Of a stretch of 64,000 nucleotides of DNA, positions 119 through 20,200 are shown piece after piece; position 1 is the first letter of the stretch; each line of letters opens with the position of its first letter. The stretch is from IMG/VR virus record IMGVR_UViG_3300035703_000006, positions 1 to 64,000 of that record. The stretch is one strand, 5' to 3'. The notes below the pieces were generated by a model that saw only the letters and a list, made by a program, of their open reading frames with translations, searched no databases and was not told the DNA's origin. Both the position numbers and the translations under genes were made by a program.

Positions 119-177
119 TGTGACACTCGTAGCACTGGCACACTAAACCCCCACAGCACCCCCTGATGCCCTATAAT
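119..177 (+). promoter_or_regulatory. Early promoter cassette 1
   Basis: TGTGACA(119-125)-N10-TGGCACA(136-142)-CTAAA; TATAAT at 172-177; no -35 hexamer. Confidence 0.8.
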
Positions 178-203
178 ACAGGGACACAAGCAAAGGAGAC
201 CTG

Positions 204-455: not shown

Positions 456-457
456 TT

Positions 458-838
458 ATGACTTTCACCTTTCCTCGTGTTTCTGCTGGCATCTACGAAG
501 TCCAGAAGGATTCTAATACTGTTGGATTCATTCGTAAAGCAACTGCTTCTAAGTGGATTGTAACTGATGTTGTAGACACTCCTCAACACGTTACAAAGAC
601 TCTTAAGGATGCAAAGGATGCTTGTATCAACCTGATTATCTTTGAGAGTGTTGACAACACTCCTGAAGATGTGTATAATGACTCTGTGGAGGTTGATAAG
701 GTTAATGCTGAACTCAATAAGGTTCTTGAGGGTTCTTTGAGAACCTATAGGCAGATTCCTGGGACTGATGAGTTTGAGGAAGTATGTCCGAGTAAGTTTG
801 GATTTGCTGAACCTACTCTAGAACCTATTGTGTTCTAA
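458..838 (+). CDS. Hypothetical early protein, acidic C-terminus
   Basis: ATG at 458, coupled to the upstream stop. Confidence 0.75.
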   Translation: MTFTFPRVSAGIYEVQKDSNTVGFIRKATASKWIVTDVVDTPQHVTKTLKDAKDACINLIIFESVDNTPEDVYNDSVEVDKVNAELNKVLEGSLRTYRQIPGTDEFEEVCPSKFGFAEPTLEPIVF

Positions 839-931
839 TGACTTATTTTGTAGTTTATTTGATACTTCTTAGTATCGCACTGGTTTTTAATTACTCTCTT
901 CATTCAGTTAATCCAAAGGACGACGATTAAA

Positions 932-1066
932 ATGCACGATTCTACTCTTGACCTGTTTTGTGAACACGAGTCTGCTGAGTATGCAGATGAGTATGCACTG
1001 GAGATTGAAAGGAAAGCAGCAGAACTTGAAGTAACTGTTGATTATTATATGGCAGAGTTTATGTGA
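932..1066 (+). CDS. Small acidic hypothetical protein (44 aa, ...EIERKAAELEVTVDYYMAEFM)
   Basis: Hand-translated, below the ORF-track cutoff; AAGGA RBS; resembles a small-ORF family I recall from cyanophages. Confidence 0.7.
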   Translation: MHDSTLDLFCEHESAEYADEYALEIERKAAELEVTVDYYMAEFM

Positions 1067-1070
1067 TCTC

Positions 1071-1129
1071 TGTGCCACTTCTGAGACCGTCCAGCACTCT
1101 TCCCGAACTAACGGGAGGGGTGCTATAAT
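1071..1129 (+). promoter_or_regulatory. Early promoter cassette 2 (degenerate right arm)
   Basis: TGTGCCA 1071-1077; TGCTATAAT 1121-1129; same 53-nt offset as cassette 1. Confidence 0.75.
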
Positions 1130-1159
1130 GTATGAATACAAACGTGATTTGATTTATTG

Positions 1160-2395: not shown

Positions 2396-2422
2396 ATTAT
2401 ATTATGTGTGACAAATAGAATT

Positions 2423-2587
2423 ATGCCTTTTACAAAGAAGTTTCCACAATCAGGAGAAACAATTCACATTCGAGTTCCAAAGTGTTATGCTGAACTAATT
2501 GAGGAATTGATGGTAACTTTAGATGCACGATTTGATGTAGAAAAAGGAAAACATCTTCTTCATAAGTTCATACACAATCTCACCTGA
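2423..2587 (+). CDS. Small ribbon-helix-helix-like DNA-binding protein, paralog A (54 aa)
   Basis: Hand-translated MPFTKKFPQSGETIHIRVPKCYAELIEELMVTLDARFDVEKGKHLLHKFIHNLT; strand-helix-helix pattern; similar to 10936..11100. Confidence 0.6.
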   Translation: MPFTKKFPQSGETIHIRVPKCYAELIEELMVTLDARFDVEKGKHLLHKFIHNLT

Positions 2588-2659
2588 GTCTTGAGAGTCG
2601 TTGTGCCAGTTGTAGTGGTGGCACACTAAATGAGCACTGACCCGTGATTGTGGTATAGT
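2585..2659 (+). promoter_or_regulatory. Early promoter cassette 3
   Basis: TGAGTC 2585-2590; TGTGCCA 2602-2608; TGGCACA 2619-2625; TGGTATAGT 2651-2659. Confidence 0.8.
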
Positions 2660-2683
2660 AGTTCTATGGTTGAGGAAGACCCG

Positions 2684-2851
2684 ATGACTTACGCACCACA
2701 CATTCCACATAACATTCCTTATTTGCTTGTTCCTGAGAATCGAGTAAAGTGTGTTTTTGATTGGTATAAGAGAGGGCAAGACCATCCAATGAACTTTCCT
2801 GCTTATGCTTATTGGATTCAAAAATGTGAAAGTGATGGGAGTGATTACTGA
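2684..2851 (+). CDS. Hypothetical early protein (55 aa)
   Basis: ATG 2684 after GAGGA RBS, downstream of cassette 3. Confidence 0.7.
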   Translation: MTYAPHIPHNIPYLLVPENRVKCVFDWYKRGQDHPMNFPAYAYWIQKCESDGSDY

Positions 2852-3043
2852 ATGACTACTCAAACTCTACTCAACAAAGTTCTAATGATTGAAGAATTGC
2901 TCAACGAAAAGCAACTCACTGCACTGCGTGATATGCTTTATGTGTATAAAGAACTTCAGAGTGAGGTTCATAATTATCCTCCTGAAGATACTTTGTTCAC
3001 TCAAACTCAATTTGAAATCTTTGACATTTTCGACATCAAATGA
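2852..3043 (+). CDS. Hypothetical early protein
   Basis: Abutting ORF in operon. Confidence 0.7.
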   Translation: MTTQTLLNKVLMIEELLNEKQLTALRDMLYVYKELQSEVHNYPPEDTLFTQTQFEIFDIFDIK

Positions 3044-3249
3044 CTTCAATCTCTTTTACATCTGGTGAGTTGCTTGATATTATCAAAACACTTGAGGAAA
3101 AAGAAAATCTTGCCTACCTGGTAGATTATGACCCAGGACTTGCTGCTTATTATATGAATCTTGGAAATCAATTCCAAACAATCTATGATAAGTTGCAAGA
3201 ACTCCCTGGAGAGTCTAGAGTTGCCAATCTTGTCCTTGCTGTAAATTGA
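3040..3249 (+). CDS. Hypothetical early protein
   Basis: ATGA stop/start overlap with the previous ORF. Confidence 0.7.
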   Translation: MTSISFTSGELLDIIKTLEEKENLAYLVDYDPGLAAYYMNLGNQFQTIYDKLQELPGESRVANLVLAVN

Positions 3250-3515
3250 TGATGGAAAAGCACAATCTGGTTATTCTTTCCACTGCACACCTGCATCCAT
3301 TGGAAGCAGCAAAGATTGATGAGTTTGCTTATGTTGGAAACAAAGAGTGTGCTCTTGTTAATACATCTCCAGAGATGAGAGATTTTTATTATCAAGGTGG
3401 ATTGGTTTGTTTGTGCGACCTTCTAAAAGAAGTGCAAGAAAAGCACAATGCAGATTATGTGTTGTTTGACCCCGATGCAAACACTACTGATGGGTTTAAG
3501 TATTATGATTGGTGA
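3249..3515 (+). CDS. Hypothetical early protein
   Basis: TGATG coupling; ends directly at cassette 4. Confidence 0.7.
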   Translation: MMEKHNLVILSTAHLHPLEAAKIDEFAYVGNKECALVNTSPEMRDFYYQGGLVCLCDLLKEVQEKHNADYVLFDPDANTTDGFKYYDW

Positions 3516-3575
3516 TGTGCCAGTCGTAAAGGTGGCACATTAGACAATCCAATGGGGCACTTGATGCCCTATAAT
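3515..3575 (+). promoter_or_regulatory. Early promoter cassette 4
   Basis: Perfect ATGTGCCA-N10-TGGCACAT 3515-3540; TATAAT 3570-3575. Confidence 0.8.
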
Positions 3576-3596
3576 GACTTCATACGCAACCAACTG

Positions 3597-3788
3597 ATGA
3601 CTTACGATGAAGTTTATGAAATGATTTGCCGTATGGAAACGTATGGTGGGTCATTTGTTGTTGCACTTGCTGGTGCAATGCGAAAAGCAGATGCCTCTAA
3701 TAAAAATAGATTGATTCTTGCATTTCCTGAATATGTGCAAGAATATGGTCCTGATAGCAAGTTCCCTGTCCCTACTAAGTCTCTGTGA
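3597..3788 (+). CDS. Hypothetical early protein (63 aa)
   Basis: ATG 3597 downstream of cassette 4; motif YGGSFVxALAxAxxxADxxN. Confidence 0.75.
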   Translation: MTYDEVYEMICRMETYGGSFVVALAGAMRKADASNKNRLILAFPEYVQEYGPDSKFPVPTKSL

Positions 3789-3958
3789 ACTACCTTTGTT
3801 TGGTTGATGGTCTGCTAGAATATGCTAGCACCAGTCCCTCAAACTTTGCACATTATCAGTTAATGTATTCTGAAGAGCATAGAAATGCTGATGTTCAGTT
3901 TCTTACTTTGACTGATGAGGAGTATGATGAAATGTTCCCTTATGAGGAGGATGAATGA
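3785..3958 (+). CDS. Hypothetical acidic protein (57 aa)
   Basis: Hand-translated; GTGA overlap with the previous stop; MNYLCLVDGLLEY...EEDE. Confidence 0.65.
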   Translation: MNYLCLVDGLLEYASTSPSNFAHYQLMYSEEHRNADVQFLTLTDEEYDEMFPYEEDE

Positions 3959-4134
3959 AACCTAAGTTCCGTGTTATTCTTGAAATGGCAATTGAACAAG
4001 GTGTTCAACGTGGTTGGCGTCTTGCTCATAAACATGTAGAGAATCCAGAAGAGCATGTAATCATTGAACGTATCAATGATTCTGTAATGTCTGAAATCTA
4101 CGAATACTTTACTTTTGAGGATGAGAATTTCTGA
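3955..4134 (+). CDS. Hypothetical protein (59 aa)
   Basis: Hand-translated; ATGA overlap; MKPKFRVILEMAIEQGVQRGWRLAHKH... Confidence 0.7.
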   Translation: MKPKFRVILEMAIEQGVQRGWRLAHKHVENPEEHVIIERINDSVMSEIYEYFTFEDENF

Positions 4135-4556
4135 TGTTGAAAACTAAAATGAATCCTGAAGTTAAGCAGAAGTGGATTGATGCTCTGCGTTCTGGTGATT
4201 ATGAGCAAGGTAGTGAGAAACTCCGTGGTGTAAATGGTTATTGTTGCCTTGGTGTTCTTTGTGACATTTATGCACGAGAACATGATACTCAATGGGAGTT
4301 CAGGGGTTATGATGAACTTAGTGATGAATCTAATCCACATCCAATGGATTATTGGTATTTTGATGACCAAAGTGAGTTTCTACCTAAAATTGTGATGAAT
4401 TGGGCAGGATTGAAAACTCATAATCCTTCAGTGAGAGTTGATATTGAAGATAATTTTGGTGATGATAATTCTTTTTATACCGATGAGATTGCCAATGTGA
4501 ACGATTCGGGTTATACTTTTATGGACCTTTCTAAAATTATCGAACAACAACTCTGA
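4134..4556 (+). CDS. Hypothetical phage protein with YCCLGVLC motif
   Basis: 140-aa ORF coupled to both neighbours. Confidence 0.75.
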   Translation: MLKTKMNPEVKQKWIDALRSGDYEQGSEKLRGVNGYCCLGVLCDIYAREHDTQWEFRGYDELSDESNPHPMDYWYFDDQSEFLPKIVMNWAGLKTHNPSVRVDIEDNFGDDNSFYTDEIANVNDSGYTFMDLSKIIEQQL

Positions 4557-4744
4557 TGCAAGAAGATAACACTCTGTCTCAAGGACGCATTGCAACTCAC
4601 AAATCTGTGAATGTTGCTATCTATTTCAATGATGAAATGGATGATGGTGAAGTGCGAGACTTCATTGAACGTGCCCTTGAAAAGTATCAACATCCAGATG
4701 ACATTGTGAAAAACTATGAATACTGGTATGATGTTGAGTCTTAA
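4556..4744 (+). CDS. Hypothetical protein
   Basis: TGATG coupling. Confidence 0.7.
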   Translation: MQEDNTLSQGRIATHKSVNVAIYFNDEMDDGEVRDFIERALEKYQHPDDIVKNYEYWYDVES

Positions 4745-4811
4745 GTGAGAATGTGCCAGTTGTAGCACTGGCACACTATATCCCCCAAACCCCTGCTGGT
4801 GGTGCTATGAT
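4735..4811 (+). promoter_or_regulatory. Early promoter cassette 5
   Basis: TGAGTC 4735-4740; TGTGCCA 4752-4758; TGGCACA 4769-4775; TGCTATGAT 4803-4811. Confidence 0.8.
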
Positions 4812-4832
4812 GAACGGAGTTCAAAGAAACCA

Positions 4833-5264
4833 ATGATCTCTCTGCGGAATCCAATTATGGAAATCAACTACAAAGAAGTTTATTCTCAGAAAACTGCGAA
4901 TAAAATTGAAGAATTGGTTGCTGAATCTTATTGTCTTGAGGACATTGTAGAGTTCATTGAAGAAAACTCTGAAGAAGATTTCTGTAATCTTTATGAAGAG
5001 TATGTGAATGTTGGTGAGCAGTATTCTTATGGTGCTGTAGATGCCTTCATTGAAGAGTTTGGTCTTCAATCTTTCACTGCCACTTGCTTTGAAGATGCTT
5101 ACCGAGGACAATGGGAATCTAAAGCAGATTATGCTGAAAACTATGTCACTGATTGTTATTCTATAGATCTGCCTGGTTTCCTGGAGATTGACTGGGAAGC
5201 AACATTTGATAATCTGGATGTGACCATCACTGAGAATGGTTATGTGTTCGACACTCAATTCTGA
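4833..5264 (+). CDS. ArdA-like antirestriction (DNA-mimic) protein
   Basis: Very Asp/Glu-rich; C-terminus YRGQWESKADYA...FLEIDWEATFDNL...NGYVF matches the ArdA C-terminal pattern; first gene after cassette 5. Confidence 0.6.
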   Translation: MISLRNPIMEINYKEVYSQKTANKIEELVAESYCLEDIVEFIEENSEEDFCNLYEEYVNVGEQYSYGAVDAFIEEFGLQSFTATCFEDAYRGQWESKADYAENYVTDCYSIDLPGFLEIDWEATFDNLDVTITENGYVFDTQF

Positions 5265-5267
5265 ACT

Positions 5268-5420
5268 ATGAAACTTTATCTTCAAGACAAGGCAGTTGAA
5301 TTGATTCTCTATTGCTTGGAACAACAAGCAAGTGAGTTCAATGAGGAAGAAATGAAGGATTATGAACATATCCTTCATTCCATTGAAATTGCAAATGATT
5401 CTGTTGATTTCAATTTCTAA
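5268..5420 (+). CDS. Hypothetical protein (50 aa), paralog of 10226..10387
   Basis: Hand-translated; LILYCLEQQASEFNEEE. Confidence 0.65.
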   Translation: MKLYLQDKAVELILYCLEQQASEFNEEEMKDYEHILHSIEIANDSVDFNF

Positions 5421-5686
5421 TGATGCCTGATTTTCCTACAATTCAATCTAAGGATGGCACTATGATAGTGTCATTTTATCCAGTCAAAACACCATTTGGT
5501 GATATATCTGAGACCTGGACATTTAAGGTTCTTGAGTGGAAAGGTATTGAGACAATCTCCAAGAGGTTCATTAACAAAGTTGAGAAAAAAGTTCAACTTA
5601 GGGAATATGAATCTTTTGGTTATGTTTTTGTAAAAGACAATGCGGATCTTCCGCAACTTGGTAATCCTATGGCAGGTGCTGTGTAA
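5420..5686 (+). CDS. Hypothetical protein
   Basis: TAATG coupling. Confidence 0.7.
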   Translation: MMPDFPTIQSKDGTMIVSFYPVKTPFGDISETWTFKVLEWKGIETISKRFINKVEKKVQLREYESFGYVFVKDNADLPQLGNPMAGAV

Positions 5687-5901
5687 TGTTATTTCAATTA
5701 ACTGATATTGAGTTTGATTTTGATGATGGTGAGGAAATCTCTGGAGAACTTCCTTATGATGAACAAGTTGCAGTTGCTCAATCTGTCATTGGTGAAGTTT
5801 TTGATGTCGAATCTGAAGATGACCTTGCCGATGCAGTTAGTGATTACACTGGTTGGTGTGTGAAATCTCTTAATTATGTTGCAATCTCTGAATCTCACTG
5901 A
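5686..5901 (+). CDS. Hypothetical acidic protein
   Basis: TAATG coupling; highly acidic. Confidence 0.7.
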   Translation: MLFQLTDIEFDFDDGEEISGELPYDEQVAVAQSVIGEVFDVESEDDLADAVSDYTGWCVKSLNYVAISESH

Positions 5902-5902
5902 A

Positions 5903-6097
5903 ATGCCTGAAATGAATCGTGACCAACTGATTGAAGACTATATCCAGACACTCATTGAGAATATGGACTATAAGACAATGGAGTGTTTTGTTTATGATAC
6001 TCTGAAAGAGAATCTTTCTACCTACACTGATGAGGAACTTCTCACTGAAGTGGAAGAATACAATCCAGAACTCCTCGGTCTAGACGAATCTGCCTGA
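5903..6097 (+). CDS. Hypothetical acidic protein
   Basis: ATG 5903; its TGA is the start of cassette 6 (TGAGTC). Confidence 0.7.
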   Translation: MPEMNRDQLIEDYIQTLIENMDYKTMECFVYDTLKENLSTYTDEELLTEVEEYNPELLGLDESA

Positions 6098-6169
6098 GTC
6101 TAGTGTTGAGATGTGCCACTTGTTCTAGTGGCACACTAAATGAGCACAGACCCCAAAAGGTGCTATATT
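6095..6169 (+). promoter_or_regulatory. Early promoter cassette 6
   Basis: TGAGTC 6095-6100; TGTGCCA 6112-6118; TGGCACA 6129-6135; TGCTATATT 6161-6169. Confidence 0.8.
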
Positions 6170-6226
6170 AAGAGGGTGGAAGGGGTCAGACCCACCCACA
6201 AACGTCCAAACTCTATCTTAATCAAA

Positions 6227-6430
6227 ATGACTGCTGTTGTTGATTTCTCTAAGGATGTGATGCTCGGTATGCTTCGCAAGGGGCAAACTGGAACTCAGAT
6301 TCTGGACATTCTGAATGTTCTGGTTCCTGAGCAAACTGAACTCACTCGTGAGCAAGTTTGTGAGGATCTGGGCATTGCTGATTGTCCCGAGAATGATGAT
6401 GAGATTGCCCGTGCAATGTCTGCTGTCTGA
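6227..6430 (+). CDS. Hypothetical protein (67 aa)
   Basis: ATG 6227 after the cassette 6 leader. Confidence 0.7.
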   Translation: MTAVVDFSKDVMLGMLRKGQTGTQILDILNVLVPEQTELTREQVCEDLGIADCPENDDEIARAMSAV

Positions 6431-6528
6431 GTGATTAAATAGAAACGATAGAGGGCAAGTCCCTGTTATGTCCTGATGAGGCATATCACACTTGCTCCAT
6501 CAAAACAATTCCTTCATTATTGAAACCA

Positions 6529-6717
6529 ATGTTTGTTATTTGTCCCGCATCATTTGATCTGGTTGATGCAGAGTGGTTTGATAATGTTTATGAAGCAAAA
6601 GAAGAAGCACTCGACTGGAGTGTTGAACTTGCTGGTCGCAATGTGATTGTTTATGAGGCACTTGAAGATGATGATGGTGCTTATGACTTCAAACCCGTAA
6701 GTTCAATCTGTGCTTGA
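6529..6717 (+). CDS. Hypothetical acidic protein
   Basis: ATG 6529 (TTG 6520 is an alternative start). Confidence 0.7.
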   Translation: MFVICPASFDLVDAEWFDNVYEAKEEALDWSVELAGRNVIVYEALEDDDGAYDFKPVSSICA

Positions 6718-6863
6718 TGAAGACCTTAACATTCAAGGCACCAAATAAGATGAAGACTATAATTCTTATCTTTGCAGTTGCTTTTGTATTCTCTCCTGGA
6801 GTGCGAAATGCAACTGCAAATACTCTTTACAATGTTGCTGACATTATCAGCACAAATCGGTGA
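6717..6863 (+). CDS. Small putative membrane protein (48 aa)
   Basis: Hand-translated; hydrophobic stretch IILIFAVAFVF; its TGA starts cassette 7. Confidence 0.6.
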   Translation: MKTLTFKAPNKMKTIILIFAVAFVFSPGVRNATANTLYNVADIISTNR

Positions 6864-6935
6864 GTCCAGTGTTGAGATGTGCCACCTGTAGCACTGGCAC
6901 ACTAAACGGGCACTGGAACTTTTTTCTGGTAGATT
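6861..6935 (+). promoter_or_regulatory. Early promoter cassette 7
   Basis: TGAGTC 6861-6866; TGTGCCA 6878-6884; TGGCACA 6895-6901; TGGTAGATT 6927-6935. Confidence 0.8.
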
Positions 6936-6987
6936 AAGAGGGTGGAGGGGGTCAGTCCCACCCGAGTCCCAATCTCAATTCTTTACA

Positions 6988-7644
6988 ATGGATCGCACTC
7001 AAGTTATTGCAAAGATTCAGTCCATTCTGAAACTGCAAGAGAACACTACGTTTGATGGTGAAGCATCTGCTGCTGCTGCGATGATTGATAAACTCTGCAA
7101 GCAGTATGGTGTTACGATCAGTGAAGCAACTGAAACTCAAGTTCTCGATGAATCTTTTCTCAACTTCAAACGTGTAAATGTTGCACTGACAACTCTTCTC
7201 AATGCAATTGCATCTTTCTATGATGCAAAAGCATATATGAAGAATGGTGATACCAAATCTCTGCAAGTGATTGGTTCTGAAGCACAACAAATCCAAGTGC
7301 GTCTCTATTATGATTACCTGGTGCAGGTGATGGAGAAAGAAGCAGAAGTTGCACATCAAGCAGAAAAGATTATGTCTGCTCTGCAAGGTAAAGCAATGTC
7401 CCGTAGTTTCAAACTTAATTTCCGCAAGGCATTTGCAGATAATGTTGCTCTGCGTTTGCGTGAGATGAAAGAAGCAGAGGGACGAGTTCATGATGATGCT
7501 GATGCAGTGAAAAACAAACTCTCTGCAATGCGATTCGGACGTGCCAAGAAGATGAATGGTGCAAGTGGTGCTGGTGTTGGTAGTTCTGTTTCTTTGAATC
7601 GTCAAGCAACTGGTTCTGTGACCAAACAACTCTGTGGAGTGTGA
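6988..7644 (+). CDS. DUF2786-like domain protein
   Basis: N-terminus IAKIQSILKLQENTTFDGEASAAAAMIDKLCKQYGV matches the DUF2786 pattern; FRKAFA motif. Confidence 0.7.
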   Translation: MDRTQVIAKIQSILKLQENTTFDGEASAAAAMIDKLCKQYGVTISEATETQVLDESFLNFKRVNVALTTLLNAIASFYDAKAYMKNGDTKSLQVIGSEAQQIQVRLYYDYLVQVMEKEAEVAHQAEKIMSALQGKAMSRSFKLNFRKAFADNVALRLREMKEAEGRVHDDADAVKNKLSAMRFGRAKKMNGASGAGVGSSVSLNRQATGSVTKQLCGV

Positions 7645-7663
7645 GTTTCACACTCCTTTTTTT
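7636..7663 (+). terminator. Intrinsic terminator
   Basis: GGAGTGTGA-GTT-TCACACTCC 9-bp stem followed by T7, overlapping the stop of 6988..7644. Confidence 0.75.
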
Positions 7664-7684
7664 CCTTTAATTTTTTGATACGAG

Positions 7685-8017
7685 ATGAACGCACAACTTT
7701 CGATTGATGAGTGTAAAATTATGTGGGTTGTTGGAGCACTTGAACGACTTGCAACTTTAGGTTTGCTTGGTCCTGATGTTCCACTGAAACTTTCTGCTCA
7801 TGCAGTAGAAGATTATATTCAGATTGACGAGCATCGGGAACTTTTGTTTGAGTCAGATTTTGAGATTGCAAGTATTATGACTGCACTGATCAATGATGAA
7901 TGTGATCCAGAAGTTCAAGATCCTGAAGATACAAATCTTCTGATTGATCTTCTGCTAGAGTATAAGAATAATCGCACTGAGATTGTGAAGTATGCACTCT
8001 CTTATCAACTCATCTGA
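7685..8017 (+). CDS. Hypothetical protein
   Basis: 110-aa ORF; its TGA starts cassette 8. Confidence 0.75.
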   Translation: MNAQLSIDECKIMWVVGALERLATLGLLGPDVPLKLSAHAVEDYIQIDEHRELLFESDFEIASIMTALINDECDPEVQDPEDTNLLIDLLLEYKNNRTEIVKYALSYQLI

Positions 8018-8089
8018 GTCCAATGATACCCTGTGCCACTTGTACTGGTGGCACACTAAATGAGCACGGGGTTAAAAATGTGGTATTAT
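8015..8089 (+). promoter_or_regulatory. Early promoter cassette 8
   Basis: TGAGTC 8015-8020; TGTGCCA 8032-8038; TGGCACA 8049-8055; TGGTATTAT 8081-8089. Confidence 0.8.
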
Positions 8090-8148
8090 TAAAGGGTGGA
8101 GGGAGCAGGGGTGCCTGTCCCACCCACGAGACCCATTGTTTATTCTTT

Positions 8149-8756: not shown

Positions 8757-9005
8757 ATGTTTGACCTTCTTAATTTTCAACCTCATTCAATTCCTGAATG
8801 TATTCAAGCACGATATAAGTTTGAGAATGATTGGGAGATTTCTGTTGTTGCGGGTCCACCGAATTGTGGATTATATGGTAATCTGAATGAGAATACTTAT
8901 GAAGTTGCTATTTTCCGACCGAATGGTAATATGACCGAAGATGTCAATGGTTGGAATACAAAACAAGAAGTCTCTGCGATGATGTGGGTGCTGTCTCAAC
9001 TCTAG
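8757..9005 (+). CDS. Hypothetical protein
   Basis: ATG 8757; ISVV...GLYG...YEVAI. Confidence 0.7.
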   Translation: MFDLLNFQPHSIPECIQARYKFENDWEISVVAGPPNCGLYGNLNENTYEVAIFRPNGNMTEDVNGWNTKQEVSAMMWVLSQL

Positions 9006-9054
9006 ACTCGCATACCCATCAGGGATGCTGATAGGTAGAACAATCGTAGACCCC

Positions 9055-9083
9055 TTGACAAACCCCCCGATCCGTGCTATGAT
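9055..9083 (+). promoter_or_regulatory. Canonical sigma70-type promoter
   Basis: TTGACA 9055-9060, 17-nt spacer, TG-C-TATGAT 9075-9083. Confidence 0.8.
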
Positions 9084-9105
9084 GAACGAAGTTCAGAGTC
9101 AAGAG

Positions 9106-9279
9106 ATGACCACTGCTCAACGGATGGAAAAGCAATTCTTTATTTCTTTCATCCGACTTGTTGATGAGGTTCAAGGTAAGCAAAAACTTCCTTCACAGAT
9201 TCAATCGAATCGTAAGTCTGTTTGGGTGAAGCAAACACAAAATCCTAAGCAAAAGAAAGATGCTCTTGCCCGAATCTAA
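9106..9279 (+). CDS. Hypothetical basic protein (57 aa)
   Basis: ATG 9106 after the promoter. Confidence 0.7.
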   Translation: MTTAQRMEKQFFISFIRLVDEVQGKQKLPSQIQSNRKSVWVKQTQNPKQKKDALARI

Positions 9280-9316
9280 ATCTTTCTTTCATCTGTCCCA
9301 CACAAACAAACAAGAA

Positions 9317-9481
9317 ATGCTGATCAAAACTGTTTTCGACGTTCAGACCAAACAACCTGGTTATGCTGTGTGTGATCCTCACACTGAACGTTGTGGTTTT
9401 GTGACTTACAACATTCTCAATGCAATTAAAGCAGGACAATGTAAGTCTTTCACTGAAGTCCAACAACTCATCAATGCCTGA
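9317..9481 (+). CDS. Hypothetical protein
   Basis: ATG 9317, in operon. Confidence 0.65.
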   Translation: MLIKTVFDVQTKQPGYAVCDPHTERCGFVTYNILNAIKAGQCKSFTEVQQLINA

Positions 9482-9632
9482 AATGTTTGAAGTTACTTAT
9501 CAAGTTCCTTACAACAATCAAGAGTGGAGAAGTCAATACTTCAATACTCGCAAAGAAGCACAATCAATGGTAGAGTTCTATCAATCTTGTGGTTCACCTG
9601 CTAAACTCATTGAACGTCAAGTCAGCAACTAA
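9474..9632 (+). CDS. Hypothetical protein
   Basis: ATG 9474; YQVPYNNQEWRSQYF...MVEFYQSCGSPA. Confidence 0.7.
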   Translation: MPEMFEVTYQVPYNNQEWRSQYFNTRKEAQSMVEFYQSCGSPAKLIERQVSN

Positions 9633-9737
9633 ATGAAACGCAAAGAAAAGATTCAACTACTCTCCAAAGCACAAATCGGCAATGATCTTCTACTCATTGC
9701 TCAAGCAATTCTCAATTCTCAAAAGGACAAGAAATGA
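9633..9737 (+). CDS. Small hypothetical protein (34 aa)
   Basis: Hand-translated; fills the gap exactly, with an ATGA overlap to the next ORF. Confidence 0.5.
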   Translation: MKRKEKIQLLSKAQIGNDLLLIAQAILNSQKDKK

Positions 9738-9928
9738 TTCTCATTCGCAAAGAAAATCACGGGTGCATTTATACGATTGATCCAGAATCCAATGAACTTT
9801 ATTATGCTCCTGTCTATCAAGATAACACTGTAAATCTTTCTGAGTTTGCACCAGTTGATCTTGATGATTATGATGATGTAAGTGAAATTGAATCTATTCA
9901 ACAACAACTTATTCAAGCAATCAAATGA
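9734..9928 (+). CDS. Hypothetical protein
   Basis: Coupled ORF. Confidence 0.7.
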   Translation: MILIRKENHGCIYTIDPESNELYYAPVYQDNTVNLSEFAPVDLDDYDDVSEIESIQQQLIQAIK

Positions 9929-10221
9929 AACAATCAGTTAAAGATGTTATTAATCAACTTGAAAAACTGAATCCAAACGAAACAATTTTTTCACTCATTT
10001 ATACAAAGAATGATGTGAAAGAACTAGAGCATTATGATCCAATTACAGGACAAATTGTTTATCCTTATAATGATGAACTCGCAGAACAGGTTTTGTCTAA
10101 TCTAGATTGTTATGATGTAATCTATGAAACGATTTACAAGTGTATGAATGATGAAGTTTCTTATCAAGTCGATCAATTAGCAAAGAAAGAAAACATTACT
10201 ATTGAACCTGCTTCTTACTAA
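9925..10221 (+). CDS. Hypothetical protein
   Basis: ATGA overlap. Confidence 0.7.
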   Translation: MKQSVKDVINQLEKLNPNETIFSLIYTKNDVKELEHYDPITGQIVYPYNDELAEQVLSNLDCYDVIYETIYKCMNDEVSYQVDQLAKKENITIEPASY

Positions 10222-10225
10222 TACA

Positions 10226-10387
10226 ATGCAAGAAACATTTGTAAGGTTAAGTGAAGATCAAATCAATTTGATTCTATTCACCTTAGAACAACAAGAGAGT
10301 GATTTCAATTCTGTTGAACAATCTCTATGTGAAGCAATCATTGATACTTTCACCACTGCTTTAGTAGAGTTAAACACTCAAGCATAA
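10226..10387 (+). CDS. Hypothetical protein (53 aa), paralog of 5268..5420
   Basis: LILFTLEQQESDFNSVE; last gene of the early block. Confidence 0.65.
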   Translation: MQETFVRLSEDQINLILFTLEQQESDFNSVEQSLCEAIIDTFTTALVELNTQA

Positions 10388-10390
10388 GAG

Positions 10391-10500
10391 ATTATTATCA
10401 TTTATAACAAAATAACGTTATAATTGATAATTCAATTAAATGTATTAAAAAACATAGTTTAGTGAATTGTGTTGATATGATGATAGTGTTATAAAACCTT
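10391..10500. other. Very AT-rich non-coding tract (candidate DNA-unwinding element)
   Basis: Counted 20 G/C in 110 nt, and 7 in the first 60 nt; contains TTATAAC-N8-GTTATAA. Confidence 0.5.
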
Positions 10501-10557
10501 CTTTTTATTGTCTTATATTCTCTCTAAACCCCTCTGGTTCTTGTTGTCTTGGCCTGC

Positions 10558-10617
10558 ATTATACCATAAGACCTAAAAAAAGTCAAGCACCTTACAGACT
10601 CTTCTAGGGGTGGCACA
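10558..10617 (-). promoter_or_regulatory. Leftward sigma70-type promoter carrying a TGTGCCA half-site
   Basis: Minus strand: TGTGCCA (10617-10611) ... TTGACT (10586-10581), 17 nt, TG-G-TATAAT (10563-10558); half-site 54 nt upstream of the -10, as in the cassettes. Confidence 0.75.
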
Positions 10618-10624
10618 AGGAGTT

Positions 10625-10654
10625 ATTGACAAAAACCTGTCAATACTTTATAAG
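10625..10654 (+). promoter_or_regulatory. Putative rightward sigma70-type promoter inside a palindrome
   Basis: ATTGACA-N6-TGTCAAT 10625-10644; TATAAG at 10649-10654, 17 nt after TTGACA. Confidence 0.5.
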
Positions 10655-10660
10655 AATGAA

Positions 10661-10697
10661 ACTCCTAAGACTCACACATCTTATGAGTCTTAGGAGT
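10661..10697. repeat. Perfect 14-bp inverted repeat
   Basis: ACTCCTAAGACTCA-N9-TGAGTCTTAGGAGT. Confidence 0.85.
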
Positions 10698-10884
10698 ATT
10701 TTGCTAGTTATTCCTGAGACTCACGATACTCAAACCACTTCAAAAACTGGCACATCGTATCATGAGTCTCACAGATTCGGGTGTAGACTTATAGGGTGGG
10801 TGGCAGAGGGAAGATCATCAAATACTGATAACTGATAAGAATTACCCAGAATCCAGTGATTGCAATACTTTTTCGGGGCATTAT

Positions 10885-10934
10885 AGTTTTGTCCCAAAAC
10901 CCCCTATAAATAACCCTAGTTTTGGGACAAAACT
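10885..10934 (+). promoter_or_regulatory. T4-type late promoter flanked by a 16-bp inverted repeat of self-palindromic arms
   Basis: AGTTTTGTCCCAAAAC (10885-10900) ... TATAAATA (10905-10912) ... GTTTTGGGACAAAACT (10919-10934); ATG at 10936. Confidence 0.75.
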
Positions 10935-10935
10935 T

Positions 10936-11100
10936 ATGAGACCTCAAAAGTATAAGAATTTAGGTGAAACTGAAAGAATGCGTGTACCCTTATGCAAGCA
11001 AATTACAAGTTTGTGTGATGCATTAGATAAAAAAGCAGAAGATGGTTATGATGTCGTTGCTTTATTAGATTCGTTCATTGAGAGCATACACAATATGTGA
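10936..11100 (+). CDS. Small ribbon-helix-helix-like DNA-binding protein, paralog B (54 aa)
   Basis: Hand-translated MRPQKYKNLGETERMRVPLCKQITSLCDALDKKAEDGYDVVAYLDSFIESIHNM; shares K[FY]xxxGETxxxRVPxC..LD with 2423..2587. Confidence 0.6.
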   Translation: MRPQKYKNLGETERMRVPLCKQITSLCDALDKKAEDGYDVVALLDSFIESIHNM

Positions 11101-11505
11101 ATCATTCGTTATTACTTATCAGTTCGTCTTATCATTCGTTATATCCTCGCAGTTCGTGCATACTTATCTCTTCGTCTTATGATTCGTTGTCTATACTTAA
11201 CATCATTATGAGTTCATTACACAACCCCCCATAATGTTTGCTATTTGAATCAACCAGTGCTATACTATTCATGATACTCAGTTTCTGACATAAACTGGTG
11301 TCGTCCTCTGAGTATCATTAATACCCTATGAGTTCGTTACACGACCCCCCATAAGGTTTGTTATTCTTATTGACCAGAACTATATTATTCGTGTCTCTCA
11401 GTTCGTGTTATAAACTGATGCCCTCCCTTCGTTATATCTAACCCCCCATATGGTTTCGTATTAGAATAAGGCAGTAATGAATATAAACTATTCGTGATTG
11501 TTCGT
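11070..11505 (+). repeat. Strand-biased TTCGT short-repeat (iteron-like) array
   Basis: 14 TTCGT copies counted on the + strand; the six at 11105-11187 are spaced 18,12,18,18,12 nt; no ACGAA seen in the interval. Confidence 0.75.
11207..11460 (+). repeat. Degenerate 120-bp tandem repeat (2 copies plus a partial third)
   Basis: TATGAGTTC.TTACAC.ACCCCCCATAA.GTTTG at 11207 and 11327; third ACCCCCCATA at 11441. Confidence 0.75.
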
Positions 11506-11736
11506 TTATTATAATTAAACAGCACTGTTTGACACTTATATTTTGTGTTGTTGTATTCTTATATCTAACCGATGCCCCCTATATAAAAACGCATCACTAC
11601 CCTAACCTACAACGGACCGAAAACGACCTTCAAATTGTCTTTCAAATAAAAAAATTTTACCCAATTTTTTTTTTCTTCCAAGGTTCACGCACAAAAAATA
11701 AAAAATGATATATAAGTTTAGAATTCAATAAAAAAG

Positions 11737-11895
11737 ATGACAATAAGATTAGAAATTGATGATTATGAAAAGGATCTTTTAATTGATACGATTCAACATA
11801 GATTGGATACGGACAAAATCCTAGTAATCAATAATAGTTTAAAAGAAGAACTCGAAGATCTTTTAAGGAAAGTGGAAGAAGATGAATACGTATAA
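11737..11895 (+). CDS. Hypothetical protein (52 aa)
   Basis: Hand-translated MTIRLEIDDYEKDLLIDTIQHRLD... Confidence 0.6.
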   Translation: MTIRLEIDDYEKDLLIDTIQHRLDTDKILVINNSLKEELEDLLRKVEEDEYV

Positions 11896-12052
11896 TATTT
11901 CAGTCAATGGAAATGAAATATTGAGTCAAGTGCCGCAGAATGATTTACAGGAAAATCTGAAAGTTATCAGAGGACTTGTATGGACATCTGGGGGAAATGA
12001 TGAGGACATTATAGTGTCTCTAAATAAAAACGAAGGCCATTGCAATGAATGA
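11882..12052 (+). CDS. Hypothetical protein (56 aa)
   Basis: Hand-translated MNTYNISVNGNEILSQVP...GLVWTSGG. Confidence 0.55.
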   Translation: MNTYNISVNGNEILSQVPQNDLQENLKVIRGLVWTSGGNDEDIIVSLNKNEGHCNE

Positions 12053-12068
12053 TTTGTAGTGGTAGAAT
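12040..12068 (+). promoter_or_regulatory. Putative sigma70-type promoter
   Basis: TTGCAA 12040-12045, 17 nt, TG-G-TAGAAT 12060-12068. Confidence 0.55.
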
Positions 12069-12101
12069 ACTAGAATAAATTATTTTTTACAATTACTTTT
12101 T

Positions 12102-12851
12102 ATGGCTAAAGGATTTACGGTAAAAGCAAAACTTCCTACAGGTCCTGTGGAAGGAGAATTTAATTTAGAAGCAGCAAAAGAAATGATGAGAGGCAAGTCA
12201 GTTGTCTTTTGTCTACCTGGAAGAGGAGTTTCGTATCTTTATTTGAAGAATTTTGTTCAATTGTGTTTTGATCTTGTTCAAAATGGAGCAAGTATCCAGA
12301 TTTCACAAGATTATAGTTCAATGGTGAACTTTGCCCGATGTAAGTGTCTTGGGGCAAATGTTCTCAGAGGACCTAAGCAAATTCCTTGGGATGGAAAACT
12401 ACAATATGATTATCAACTTTGGATTGATAGTGATATTGTTTTTGACACTGAGAAGTTCTATCGTCTTGTAGCAATGGATAAAGATATTGCTGCTGGTTGG
12501 TATTGTACTGAAGATGGACACACAACATCTGTTGCACATTGGTTGCAGGAAGATGATTTCCGTAATAATGGTGGAGTAATGAATCACGAAACCTTAGAGA
12601 CGATGAGCAAGCGTCGCAAACCATTCACAGTTGATTACACAGGTTTCGGATGGGTTCTGATTAAGAAAGGAGTCTTTGAAAATCTTGAATATCCTTGGTT
12701 TGCTCCGAAGATGCAGGTGTTTGAATCTGGTGAGGTTCAAGATATGTGTGGCGAAGATGTCTCATTCTGTCTAGATGCAAAAGAAGCAGGATTTGAAATC
12801 TGGTGTGATCCTCAGATTCGTGTGGGTCATGAGAAAACAAGAATTATTTGA
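12102..12851 (+). CDS. Glycosyltransferase-like (GT-A fold) conserved cyanomyovirus protein
   Basis: LWIDSDIVF (DxD), GFGWVLIKKGVFE, GEDVSFC, VRVGHEK pattern. Confidence 0.75.
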   Translation: MAKGFTVKAKLPTGPVEGEFNLEAAKEMMRGKSVVFCLPGRGVSYLYLKNFVQLCFDLVQNGASIQISQDYSSMVNFARCKCLGANVLRGPKQIPWDGKLQYDYQLWIDSDIVFDTEKFYRLVAMDKDIAAGWYCTEDGHTTSVAHWLQEDDFRNNGGVMNHETLETMSKRRKPFTVDYTGFGWVLIKKGVFENLEYPWFAPKMQVFESGEVQDMCGEDVSFCLDAKEAGFEIWCDPQIRVGHEKTRII

Positions 12852-17225: not shown

Positions 17226-20200
17226 ATGTCAGAAATTAAAAGAGTAAAAATACAATCTTTCATTGAATCTCAGATTCCAGAGTTTCTAAATTCTGAATCT
17301 CCGTTATTTAAAGAATTTTTAGAGCAATATTATATTTCTCAAGAACATCAAACAGGTGTTGTTGACTTATCAGCAAATTTACAAAAATATAAAAGTATTG
17401 ACAATTTCAATACTGAAACTTTTTATAGTTTAGTTGGAATTTGTACTTTGACTTCTGACTTGGCATCTTTTGAAGATACTTTATATGTCAATCATACAAT
17501 AGGATTTCCTCAACAATATGGTCTTTTGAAAATTGATGATGAAATAATTACTTACACGGGAATTACAACTAACTCTTTTACTGGATGCATTCGTGGTTTT
17601 TGTGGATTAGAAAAAAATGAAGTAAATGATTCATTCAAATTTTCATCGACAGATTCCTCAGATCATATTAAAGGTTCTCAAGTAACTAATTTAAATATTT
17701 TATTTTTCCAAGAATTATTTAAAAAATTTAAAACCCAATTTTTGCCTGGGTTTGAAGATAGAGAATTTACTAGTGGTGTAAATTTACAAACTATTTTATC
17801 AAGAGCAAAGGATTTTTATATCACTAAAGGAACTGACACTTCATTTAAGATACTTTTTAGTATTTTATTTAATGAATCTATATCTGTCATTAAACCTCAA
17901 GATTATGTAATCTCATCGTCATCTAATGAATATTTGATAACAAAAAATATCTTAGTTGAGCAAATTGCTAGAGATGCAAATCTTAAAGTTTCAGATTCTG
18001 TTTTAAGAAAAGAATTAAAAGGAAAAACAATATTCCAAACTACTTCAGACAATAAAACTGCAAGTGCTTCAATTTACAATGTTGAATATAGACCTGTAAA
18101 TACTGGTGACTTTATATACAATTCGATTGGTGCTGGACAAACAACACAAAAGAATTATACAATAAAAGATTTTTATGAAATCTCATTAGATAGTACATCT
18201 TTGATATTAGATTTTAAATCTACTAAGAAAACAAAGGTTTTAGAATATACACTTAAAAATTCAAAATCAATTTTAGTTGATTCTACAATTGGATTTAAGC
18301 AGTCTGGAACTTTACTGATTAAACCGAAAAATCTTTCAAATCCGATTGTTCTATCCTATACTGATAAAACAATCAATGAATTTTTAAATGTAACAGGATT
18401 GACAATAGATTTAGATTATGGGGCAGAAATAATTGAAGAAGAATTTTTATACTCATATTTGAATGATGGGACAAAAGTTGAATTTAGACTAATAAACATT
18501 ATTGATAGTATTGATTATGGAAAAACATCAAATTTAAGAGTCGATGACAAAATAAACCTATCTTCATTTGGAATTGATTTAAATGATAGACTTGAATTTA
18601 ATCAATGGATTTATAATATCCCAACTACACATAACATAAAATCAGTCGAAGACAATACAATATATTTGTACGAAAACATTAATTTGTCAATTGGAGATAA
18701 AGTAATATTATCCAATCCAAATTTAATTGATGTAGAAAGTGTTGAAGTAGAAGTTGAAAATTTTGGATTTAATAATTATGGATATTTTGTTAACGTAAAG
18801 AGTTTTGGTCAAATCTTGAATGACAAGACTCAGTTAAAGAAAACAATCAATAAAGCATTTAGCAATCAAAATTATTTTCCAAATATTTCTGTTTTTTCTA
18901 CTGGAATTCAAAATAGCTATATTGATTATAATAATGAAAATTTTTATGTAGCATCTTCAGGATTGCCAAATTATGATATTTACGCAACAGATAGAAAAGT
19001 TTTCCCCTCTGCTGGAGTTGGAGTTTCTATATTAAATTGCCAAGATCATAATTTTTTTACAGGTGAAAAAATATACTATATTCCAAAGTCTGGTAATGTT
19101 GGTATAAAAACTTCTGCATATTTTGTAACAAAATTAAATAAAGACCAAATTAAACTTTCGTATAGTAATTCTGATGTATTTTCTAAAAATTATGTTTTTA
19201 CCAATGCTAACATCAATGGCGATTGCATTGTAAAATTTGATTTTCAAAATAAAACATTAGAAGACCAAAAACTTTTTAAAAAATTTAATTTAACAAAAAA
19301 ATTAAATAAATTTTTTACTAAAGACGACAGGAGTACAATTGATAGAGCAACAGGAATTTTAATTAATGGGGTTGAAGTGTTTTCCCCAACTCTTTATGAT
19401 GAAAACATTTATTATGGGAAATTGGATTCAGTAAAAATTGAATCTGAAGGAAAGGGATATGATGTTATTAATTTCTCTGGGTTGGAAGTCACTGATATTA
19501 ATGGTTCTAATGCAGATTTAAAAGCACATTTGATTGGTAGTTTAAGTGAAGTAAAAATATTAAGACCAGGAATTGGATATTCAAGAAAACCAAAAATTAC
19601 TTTATCTGGGGGAAATGGTTCTGGTGCAGTTTTAGAGTCAAATCTAGTAAAAACTAACATTATATCAAATTTTAAGGGAAGCACTGCTGTCAGCATTGGT
19701 TTTACTACAATTGATTTCCTAAATGGACACAATTTTGATGACGGTGAAGAAGTCTCATACATTAATAATTCAAATGGAAGTGTAAATCCACTTGTAAATA
19801 ATTCAAATTATTTTGTTGGAATAGTAAGTTCAACTCAATTAAAATTATATAAAACAAAAGAAAAAGCATTAGGAAAAACTGATCCAATTGTTTTTACTGG
19901 AATTGGATCAGGAACTCATTCTTTAAAAACATTAAATTCAAAAAATACAATTACAAAAATTTATGTAAAAAATCGTGGAGAAGGATATTCAAATAGAAAT
20001 ATTAGTGTTTTAAGTCAAATTTCGGTAAACAATCAAGAAAATGGCATAAACACTTTTGATCATTACATTTTTGCGAAAAATCATAATTTTAAAGATGAGG
20101 ATATTGTTCAGTATCAAAACAATAATACACCAATATCTGGTCTATCAACTCAGACAAATTATTATGTTAAAGTTGTAGATGAAAATAAATTTAAATTGTC

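What the first reader, a model, noticed from the sequence alone, without database searches (positions are those of the whole stretch)
10499..10617. Ninth, inverted cassette member: a non-coding leftward transcript convergent on the early operons
Seen: the minus strand has TGTGCCA 54 nt upstream of a TG-G-TATAAT (the cassette spacing), plus a near-canonical TTGACT -35 at 17 nt. The first ~50 nt of the predicted RNA are 78% purine (39 of 50 + strand bases at 10501-10550 are pyrimidines) and run into a tract of about 12-18% GC with only a 7-codon ORF. Established: purine-rich RNA forms more stable RNA:DNA hybrids, and T4 origins are promoter plus unwinding element. Inference: an R-loop primer RNA, or an antisense/collision mechanism that shuts off the distal early genes.
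Basis: partly seen in the sequence, partly recalled or inferred. Interest (0 to 1): 0.65.

Follow-up and report, generated by a model that had tools for sequence, protein, structure and literature searches.

The report
Conserved promoter inside cyanophage origin-like region
The leftward promoter is real and is conserved in many T4-like cyanophages, where it fires a short non-coding RNA across repeat units into a very AT-rich block that in most relatives sits beside clusters of host DnaA boxes, so it most likely marks a phage replication origin and is not a copy of the early-promoter cassette.

Summary
The window is the first 64 kb of a 247-kb T4-like cyanomyovirus (Kyanoviridae-like). Every literal observation holds. 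On the minus strand there is TTGACT, 17 nt, then TGgTATAAT (10586-10558). TGTGCCA lies 54 nt upstream. 39 of 50 bases at 10501-10550 are pyrimidines. The tract 10391-10500 is 18% GC. There is no conserved ORF.

As a consensus match alone the promoter is at chance level. However, its -35, TG and T-12/A-11/T-7 are kept at fixed spacing, with a free spacer, in more than 45 related loci. These include phages S-SCSM2R, S-SRM01 and P-TIM68.

It is not a cassette member. The cassette is a 24-bp palindrome plus a -35-less extended -10, about 14 copies, all on the plus strand. This site has one half-site only.

The promoter belongs to a conserved intergenic module of promoter, tandem 30-nt units and an AT/T-run block. 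Exact cyanobacterial DnaA boxes are about 90-fold enriched around it in relatives, but this genome has none.

Best reading: an origin-associated promoter, either T4 oriF/oriG-like or acting by transcriptional activation. The purine-richness argument for an R-loop is not conserved. An antisense role remains possible. RNA evidence is weak: one metatranscriptome contig ends at the predicted start.

The parts
10611..10617 (-). TGTGCCA heptamer at about -66 to -60 of the leftward promoter. It is identical to one half of the early-cassette palindrome, but no second half is present.
   Evidence: 5/14 mismatches to the palindrome. It is kept at the same position in 12 of 38 related promoters; the others have TGTG(A/G)GGATTTT there.
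10581..10586 (-). -35 hexamer TTGACT
   Evidence: TTGAC is invariant in all six loci anchored on the glycosyltransferase gene, in S-SCSM2R, S-SRM01 and P-TIM68, and in 9 further independent loci.
10558..10566 (-). Extended -10, TGgTATAAT, 17 nt from the -35
   Evidence: TG, T-12, A-11 and T-7 are invariant while the middle of the hexamer and the spacer vary.
10549..10551 (-). Predicted transcription start (A10550/A10549, 7-9 nt after the -10), behind a GC-rich discriminator
   Evidence: Inference from promoter geometry. A 223-nt contig of an RNA library (X1) lies on 10340-10549 with 3 unaligned end bases. That is contigs only, with no strand, and about a 0.15 chance of an end falling there.
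10520..10550 (-). Repeat unit 1 (AAGACAACAAGAACCAGAGG..TTTAGAG type), the conserved first ~30 nt of the RNA
   Evidence: The same unit is tandemly repeated 1 to about 10 times in relatives. It is also present in Syn9, which has no leftward promoter.
10488..10514 (-). Repeat unit 2, degenerate (AAGACAATAAAAAGAAGGTTTTATAAC)
   Evidence: Read. Together with unit 1 it makes up the 'purine-rich' 50 nt.
10438..10470 (.). Most conserved block of the intergenic region (plus strand AAATGTATTAAAAAACATAG...; as the leftward RNA, a T6 run followed by AATACATTT). Candidate unwinding element.
   Evidence: (unique in the genome).
10391..10500 (.). AT-rich tract (18% GC), which includes the 15-bp-arm AT inverted repeat 10394-10408/10417-10431
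   Evidence: In 39 relatives the mean GC of the corresponding tail is 20%.
10626..10654 (+). Context: divergent sigma-70-like promoter TTGACA-17-TATAAG. It sits in a 25-nt insertion found only in this genome and locus L152. TGGCACA lies 31 nt before its -10, so the heptamer may belong to this plus-strand promoter.
   Evidence: S-SCSM2R and Syn9 have a 12/12 plus-strand promoter at the equivalent place.
10661..10697 (+). Context: 14-bp-arm hairpin, followed in relatives by a T6-7 run on the plus strand. It is the likely intrinsic terminator of the early operon, which would place the leftward promoter inside that operon's 3' untranslated region.
   Evidence: compensatory stem changes in L127 and L152.
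10748..10791 (+). Context: degenerate plus-strand cassette promoter (TGGCACA 10748-10754, -10-like TAGACT 10786-10791)

Best explanation
The site is a host-RNA-polymerase promoter (group-1 sigma, extended -10) that belongs to a conserved, non-coding, origin-like module of T4-like cyanophages.

Predicted transcript. It starts at about 10550 and runs leftward. It crosses two ~30-nt repeat units and enters a conserved, very AT-rich block (10470-10391), which lies just beyond the stop codon of the last early gene.

Most likely function. I think transcription from it helps to open or prime this AT-rich region for the first round of phage DNA replication. This could work by a T4 oriF/oriG-style RNA-DNA hybrid handed to the phage replisome, or by transcriptional activation of an iteron/DnaA-type origin.

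DnaA boxes. In most relatives the same module carries clusters of 2-8 exact cyanobacterial DnaA boxes. This genome has lost them, so here the promoter and the repeat units would carry the function alone.

Shown: the promoter's conservation, its constant orientation towards the block, the repeat units, the DnaA-box enrichment in relatives, and the lack of coding potential.

Inferred: that the RNA is made, where it ends, and any role in replication.
For: - Promoter conservation. The -35, TG, T-12, A-11 and T-7 are kept at 17-nt spacing over a variable spacer. This holds in 6/6 relatives anchored on a flanking gene, in 38 distinct IMG/VR loci, in cultured phages S-SCSM2R, S-SRM01 and P-TIM68, and in 9 further loci chosen without reference to the AT block.
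- Module order. The order is always promoter, then unit(s) in 1 to about 10 tandem copies, then the AT/T-run block.
- DnaA boxes. TT[AT]TCCACA occurs 96 times within -500..+700 of the promoter in 39 loci (2.05/kb), against 7 in 315 kb of flanks (0.022/kb). In the independent sample, 31 of 34 boxes lie within about 400 nt of the promoter. The only box clusters of S-PM2 (19231-19264) and Syn9 (52565-52597) sit in this module. TTTTCCACA is the cyanobacterial DnaA box (PMC4674748).
- AT tract. It is in the lowest 0.1-0.5% of the genome for GC and for duplex stability.
- T4 precedent. [quoted passage not shown] R-loop formation there needs no specific sequence (PMC3016281).
- Replisome parts. The genome encodes a gp59-like helicase loader and a UvsW-type helicase candidate.
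- RNA. A contig from an RNA library ends at 10549(+3), the predicted start, and that library has no depth at 10672-11172.
Against: - No experiment, and no strand-specific read, shows the transcript. The RNA-library contig has no strand, and its end could fall there by chance (about 0.15).
- This genome has no DnaA box even at one mismatch in 9000-12500.
- In the closest relatives the box cluster lies 260-500 nt on the far side of the promoter, about 400-600 nt from the AT block. That is far for DnaA-driven melting of the block.
- Syn9 keeps the boxes, a degenerate block and one unit but has no leftward promoter, and S-PM2's version is weak. The promoter is therefore not indispensable to the module.
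- Purine richness is not conserved.
- Over the block the RNA would be U-rich, which gives weak RNA-DNA hybrids.
- GC skew is positive along the whole genome, and also in Syn9 and S-PM2, so it gives no independent origin signal.
- T4 RNase H C-domain was not found (the control was also silent).
Confidence: 0.45

Rival explanations
1. Cis-antisense or convergent-transcription control. The promoter sits inside the 3' untranslated region of the plus-strand early operon. Its RNA, or its polymerase, would collide or pair with read-through early transcripts. That would define or destabilise their 3' ends, or shut down the distal early genes (9734-10387).
For: - All neighbouring genes are on the plus strand and are real phage families (phrog_4138, phrog_1255).
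- There is no GC-rich terminator between the stop codon at 10387 and the conserved hairpin/T-run at 10661-10697, so early transcripts should cross the promoter.
- The orientation against the early operon is conserved in all relatives.
- An antisense RNA (CfrI) is known in cyanophage S-PM2 (PMC2984593).
Against: - It does not explain the conserved DNA motifs downstream (units in tandem arrays, the AT block), nor the DnaA-box clusters.
- In several relatives a bidirectional terminator lies directly left of the block, so the RNA would not reach the genes (L209, L318).
- Syn9 keeps the module without the promoter.
Confidence: 0.2
2. A trans-acting small RNA or protein-titrating RNA. The conserved 5' unit(s) would be the seed or binding motif acting on host or phage targets.
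For: - The first ~30 nt of the RNA are the best conserved transcribed part.
- The RNA is non-coding.
- It is short in relatives that have a terminator after the block.
Against: - There is no Rfam match.
- There is no significant fold (z = -1.8, mostly from one AT hairpin) and no intrinsic terminator in this genome.
- There is no second site complementary to the unit in the genome.
- The unit persists in Syn9 without a promoter, which points to a DNA-level element.
- Copy number varies from 1 to about 10.
Confidence: 0.1
3. This would be an inverted ninth copy of the early-promoter cassette, controlled through TGTGCCA by the same factor that reads the 24-bp palindrome.
For: - The heptamer is identical and lies at the cassette distance of 54 nt.
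- It is kept at that position in the closest 12 of 38 relatives.
Against: - The second half-site is absent (5/14 mismatches).
- A canonical -35 replaces the cassette's TAAAtgaGCAC box.
- All ~14 true cassettes are plus-oriented and confined to 224 kb-8 kb.
- In 26 of 38 relatives the heptamer is replaced by TGTG(A/G)GGATTTT.
- The heptamer may belong to the divergent plus-strand promoter, whose -10 lies 31 nt after it. In true cassettes that gap is 28-30 nt.
Confidence: 0.1
4. A fortuitous consensus match with no function.
For: Minus-strand matches of at least 11/12 are no more frequent than in shuffled sequence.
Against: The critical promoter positions are kept over a freely varying spacer in more than 45 loci, from marine and freshwater phages.
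Confidence: 0.03

Closest known systems
Phage T4 oriF (uvsY) and oriG (gene 34) R-loop origins
   Same: A promoter with a sigma-70-type -10 directly upstream of an A+T-rich unwinding element, in a T4-like genome that has gp59-, gp41/61- and UvsW-type functions. R-loop formation there needs no specific sequence (PMC3016281).
   Different: The T4 promoters are MotA-dependent middle promoters, and cyanophages lack MotA/AsiA. Here the promoter is a full -35/-10 host-type promoter. The AT block lies about 95 nt (47-412 nt in relatives) downstream, behind repeat units. DnaA boxes accompany the module in relatives. No R-loop has been shown.
Iteron plus DnaA-box plus AT-rich theta origins (P1 oriR, pSC101, F, R6K type) and cyanobacterial oriC
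   Same: In relatives, tandem repeat units, clusters of exact host DnaA boxes (TTTTCCACA) and an AT-rich region lie side by side.
   Different: No initiator gene is known for the units. This genome has no DnaA box. The position of the boxes relative to the AT block is variable. The host genome here is that of a lytic T4-like phage. The plasmid comparison rests on my own knowledge.
T7 primary origin; ColE1 RNA II; lambda ori activation by pR transcription
   Same: A promoter whose transcript or transcription primes or activates an adjacent AT-rich origin (own knowledge; ColE1 is also mentioned in PMC3016281).
   Different: The polymerases and processing enzymes differ. No RNase H site or processing signal was identified here.
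CfrI antisense RNA of cyanophage S-PM2
   Same: A non-coding RNA transcribed against the gene direction in a T4-like cyanophage (PMC2984593).
   Different: CfrI overlaps psbA and a homing-endonuclease gene. This RNA starts in an intergenic module and has no sequence relation to CfrI.

Membership tests
Early-promoter cassette of this phage (24-bp palindrome + extended -10) | Palindrome TGTGCCA-N10-TGGCACA | tested here: not met
   The finding site has 5 of 14 mismatches. True members have 0-3.
Early-promoter cassette of this phage (24-bp palindrome + extended -10) | TGn-extended -10 lying 52-54 nt after the first half-site | tested here: met
   54 nt.
Early-promoter cassette of this phage (24-bp palindrome + extended -10) | No -35 hexamer; a cTAAAtgaGCAC-type box after the palindrome; plus orientation within the early region | tested here: not met
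   A canonical TTGACT -35 is present, there is no box, and the site is on the minus strand. All 14 members are plus-oriented.
T4 oriF/oriG-type R-loop origin | Promoter with a sigma-70-like -10 immediately upstream of the element | tested here: met
   It is a host-type promoter, not MotA-dependent.
T4 oriF/oriG-type R-loop origin | [quoted passage not shown] | tested here: met
   18% GC, in the lowest 0.1-0.5% of the genome for GC and stability, and conserved as AT-rich in 39 relatives.
T4 oriF/oriG-type R-loop origin | Persistent RNA-DNA hybrid, and autonomous phage-dependent replication of the ~100-bp element | not testable with these tools
   Needs DRIP/S1 mapping and plasmid replication assays. 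The purine-richness proxy is not conserved.
DnaA-dependent (oriC-like) origin | Cluster of host DnaA boxes | tested here: not met
   This genome has none at one mismatch or fewer in 9000-12500. The feature is met in 25 of 39 related loci and in S-PM2, Syn9 and P-TIM68.
DnaA-dependent (oriC-like) origin | GC-skew inversion at the origin | tested here: inconclusive
   Skew is positive throughout G000, Syn9 and S-PM2, because nearly all genes lie on one strand.
Known RNA families (Rfam 15) | Covariance-model match | tested here: not met
   No hit at gathering score. Only chance-level miRNA/snoRNA rows appear at E of 0.9 or more.

The most novel reading that the evidence does not exclude
Kyanoviridae (T4-like cyanophages) share one dedicated replication origin. 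It would be built from a host-sigma promoter, phage-specific iterons, an AT/T-run unwinding block and, in most lineages, host DnaA boxes. A lytic T4-like phage would then recruit the host initiator, while lineages such as this one have dropped DnaA and rely on the promoter-driven route alone.
Probability: 0.35. Interest if true: 0.8.

Novelty: new variant of a known kind. Interest (0 to 1): 0.62.

Why it matters
How T4-like cyanophages start replication is not established. The only statement I found is a predicted single theta origin in Syn9 (Weigele 2007, cited in PMC2984593). My searches found no paper linking cyanophages with DnaA boxes.

A conserved, easily recognised module present in cultured model phages (S-PM2, Syn9, P-TIM68, S-SRM01, S-SCSM2R) would make the question directly testable.

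Host DnaA boxes in a lytic T4-like phage would tie phage replication to the host's initiator status. In cyanobacteria that status may be linked to growth and nutrient state. They would also give a marker for locating origins in metagenomic cyanophage contigs.

Tried and rejected
- tRNA scan and Rfam, at gathering score and at E-value thresholds: nothing.
- Nucleotide searches of the phage collection with the region: no match. Relatives had to be reached through a flanking protein and through DNA patterns.
- Promoter match as evidence by itself: rejected. Minus-strand matches are at chance level.
- Purine-rich 5' end as a conserved R-loop feature: rejected.
- The 7-codon ORF, or any peptide: rejected, because the start codon is not conserved.
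- The block as an intrinsic terminator: no consistent upstream hairpin.
- The units read on the plus strand as T4-type late promoters (TATAAATG): considered. The TA of the motif is not kept (the window has CTAAAC), and tandem copies make little sense as promoters.
- DnaA boxes in this genome: none.
- GC skew of this genome, Syn9 and S-PM2: uninformative.
- T4 RNase H C-domain: no hit, but the control genomes were silent too.
- Reads. Only Logan contigs were available. They give no strand, start or level. I report the contig end at 10549 as weak support only.
- Doron et al. 2016 (Syn9 start-site map) is not held in the library. Whether the palindrome cassette equals their early-gene motif rests on my unverified memory and is not claimed.

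Full report
WHAT THE WINDOW IS

The window is bases 1-64000 of a 247,112-bp IMG/VR virus record. It carries T4-type baseplate genes gp6, gp8 and gp53. The gp6 homologue is 59-62% identical to those of Synechococcus phages S-SCSM2R, Sf-FS3 and S-SSM7. It is therefore a T4-like cyanomyovirus (Kyanoviridae-like). The sequencing runs that hold it are labelled freshwater. Almost all genes lie on the plus strand. The finding sits in a 548-nt gap (10388-10935) between small early-region genes (phrog_4138, phrog_1255) and the block that leads to a glycosyltransferase, a 2OG-Fe(II) oxygenase and the baseplate genes.

THE OBSERVATION

All literal statements are correct.
- TGTGCCA lies at 10617-10611.
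- TTGACT lies at 10586-10581.
- A 17-nt spacer follows, then TGgTATAAT at 10566-10558. The heptamer-to-hexamer distance is 54 nt.
- 39 of 50 bases at 10501-10550 are pyrimidines, the top 0.025% of windows.
- GC is 18.2% at 10391-10500, the lowest 0.5% of windows. By nearest-neighbour stability the tract is in the lowest 0.1-0.4%.
- The 7-codon ORF starts at 10454.

As a bare consensus match the promoter is not remarkable. There are six minus-strand matches of at least 11/12 in the genome, which is no more than in shuffles. It is, however, the only one with TG and a 17-nt spacer.

THE CASSETTE, AND WHY THIS IS NOT A MEMBER

It consists of a 24-bp palindrome, TGTGCCA-N10-TGGCACA, then a cTAAAtgaGCAC-like box. 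A TGn-extended -10 without a -35 lies 52-54 nt from the first half-site.

I count about 14 copies. All are on the plus strand and all lie between 224 kb and 8 kb, that is, in the early region that spans the record's arbitrary start. The palindrome is widespread: more than 120 IMG/VR contigs carry it, often 3-7 copies each.

The finding site shares one heptamer and the spacing only.
- The second half has 2 of 7 matches, giving 5 of 14 mismatches overall.
- There is a canonical -35 in place of the box.
- The strand is opposite.
- Among 38 related promoters, 12 keep TGTGCCA at that position. The rest have TGTG(A/G)GGATTTT.
- The heptamer may equally belong to the divergent plus-strand promoter (TTGACA 10626, TATAAG 10649), whose -10 lies 31 nt after it.

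THE PROMOTER IS CONSERVED

I fetched relatives through the flanking glycosyltransferase gene and aligned the homologous gap of five of them. The -35 (TTGAC), TG, T-12, A-11 and T-7 are invariant at fixed spacing, while the spacer and the middle of the -10 vary. That is the signature of a working sigma-70-type promoter.

A scan of IMG/VR with the most conserved AT block gave 38-39 further distinct loci with the same promoter 47-412 nt away, always pointing at the block.

Cultured phages S-SCSM2R, S-SRM01 (freshwater) and P-TIM68 (Prochlorococcus) have it too. S-PM2 has a weak version, TTGACA-17-TGcTAAGCC. Syn9 has none.

Nine more loci, chosen only by the glycosyltransferase anchor, show the same layout.

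Unselected features are also shared: a T-run after the -35, a G-rich stretch before it, and a GC-rich discriminator.

WHAT THE PROMOTER BELONGS TO

The transcribed side has a constant order.

1. Repeat units. First comes a ~30-nt unit (tAGAtCACAAGaCCtgGAGgCATTTAtAAG type). It is present in 1 to about 10 tandem copies in different phages, which is iteron-like. The window has one good copy and one degenerate copy (10550-10520 and 10514-10488). Together they make up the 'purine-rich' 50 nt.
2. Variable stretch. A variable stretch follows.
3. AT block. Last comes the best conserved block of the whole gap, 10438-10470. Read as the leftward RNA it is a T6-7 run followed by AATACATTT. It is embedded in a tract of about 20% GC in all relatives.

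The decisive surprise is the distribution of exact cyanobacterial DnaA boxes (TT[AT]TCCACA; consensus confirmed in PMC4674748).
- They occur 96 times within -500..+700 of the promoter in 39 loci.
- Only 7 occur in 315 kb of flanking sequence, an enrichment of about 90-fold. 25 of 39 loci have clusters of 2-8 boxes.
- In the independent sample, 31 of 34 boxes lie next to the promoter.
- The only box clusters of the S-PM2 and Syn9 genomes lie in this module.

The window's own genome has no box at all here, even at one mismatch. At the place where its closest relatives carry 5-8 boxes, it has an inverted repeat around TATAAATA instead (10885-10934).

MECHANISM

A promoter, then iteron-like repeats, then an AT-rich block, with host DnaA boxes alongside, is the anatomy of a replication origin.

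[quoted passage not shown] The transcript forms an R-loop that primes the leading strand. The sequence of the element is not critical (PMC3016281).

The phage has a gp59-like helicase loader and a UvsW-type helicase candidate.

I therefore rank 'origin-associated promoter' first (0.45). I cannot decide between priming by an R-loop and activation by transcription.

Evidence against the R-loop detail:
- Purine richness is 78% here but 58% on average in relatives.
- The RNA over the block is U-rich.
- The RNA has little structure (z = -1.8).

Evidence against the necessity of the promoter: Syn9 keeps the boxes, the block and one unit without it.

GC skew is positive throughout this genome, Syn9 and S-PM2, and gives no test.

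TRANSCRIPT EVIDENCE

One freshwater RNA library (X1) holds a 223-nt contig on 10340-10549, with three unaligned end bases. It therefore ends at the predicted start. The library has no depth at 10672-11172, while the other runs laid beside it (X2 and X4, library type not on record) are continuous across the region.

These are assembled contigs, so they give no strand, level or true end. With about 110 contig ends over 5 kb, the chance of one falling within 3 nt of a named place is about 0.15. I count it as weak support.

RIVALS

- Convergent or antisense control of the early operon (0.2). This is plausible because the promoter lies between the last stop codon (10387) and the conserved plus-strand terminator hairpin (10661-10697), which shows compensatory changes and a T-run in relatives. 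It does not explain the conserved DNA motifs or the DnaA boxes.
- A trans-acting small RNA (0.1). It lacks a fold, a terminator and a target.
- Cassette membership (0.1). It fails two of three defining features.
- Chance (0.03). It is excluded by conservation.

NOVELTY

My searches found no paper linking cyanophages to DnaA boxes or describing this module. A review reports only a predicted single theta origin for Syn9 (PMC2984593). I file the finding as a new variant of a known kind: a transcription-linked phage origin.

Noticed in passing
window 119-8090, and G000 224,482-245,600 (for example 2602-2662, 3516-3575, 6112-6170, 8032-8092): About 14 plus-strand copies of a 24-bp palindrome, TGTGCCA-N10-TGGCACA. 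Each is followed by a TAAAtgaGCAC-like box and a -35-less TGn-extended -10, and is often preceded by a TGAGTC box. The palindrome occurs in more than 120 IMG/VR contigs, several copies each. It looks like an activator-dependent early or delayed-early promoter class whose binding factor is unknown.
   Followed up: partly
L333 (S-PM2 19231-19264); L338 (Syn9 52565-52597); L325 (P-TIM68, locus 1866-1888); IMG/VR loci L124, L126, L127, L221, L222 and others: Clusters of 2-8 exact cyanobacterial DnaA boxes (TTTTCCACA) in the homologous intergenic module of many T4-like cyanophages. In Syn9 the stretch is annotated as small ORFs gp86/gp87.
   Followed up: partly
window 10661-10697: A perfect 14-bp-arm hairpin built on GACTCA/TGAGTC. 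It shows compensatory changes in relatives and is followed there by a plus-strand T6-7 run, so it is the likely terminator of the early operon. A second GAGACTCA inverted repeat (10715-10729/10757-10771) brackets the next cassette-like operator.
   Followed up: partly
window 10885-10934: A 16-nt perfect inverted repeat whose loop holds an exact T4 late-promoter consensus, TATAAATA (10906-10913), just before the ORF at 10936. It occupies the place where the closest relatives have their DnaA-box cluster.
   Followed up: no
window 11101-11528: A second apparently non-coding stretch. It has three ~27-30-nt direct repeats rich in CTTATCA (11101-11188). It also has two ~120-nt repeats (about 11200-11320 and 11320-11440), each with a CCCCCCATAA box and a TGcTATACT / CTATATT -10-like element.
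   Followed up: no
G000 223,960-224,290: The least stable duplex of the genome (about 224,000-224,090) lies between a terminator and a small lysine/alanine-rich ORF. It carries TTGACA-17-TAAAAT and TATAAATA. I did not examine it for origin features.
   Followed up: no
window 10620-10644: A 25-nt insertion carrying TTGACA, present only in this genome and locus L152. It creates a divergent plus-strand sigma-70-like promoter whose predicted start falls at the foot of the terminator hairpin.
   Followed up: no
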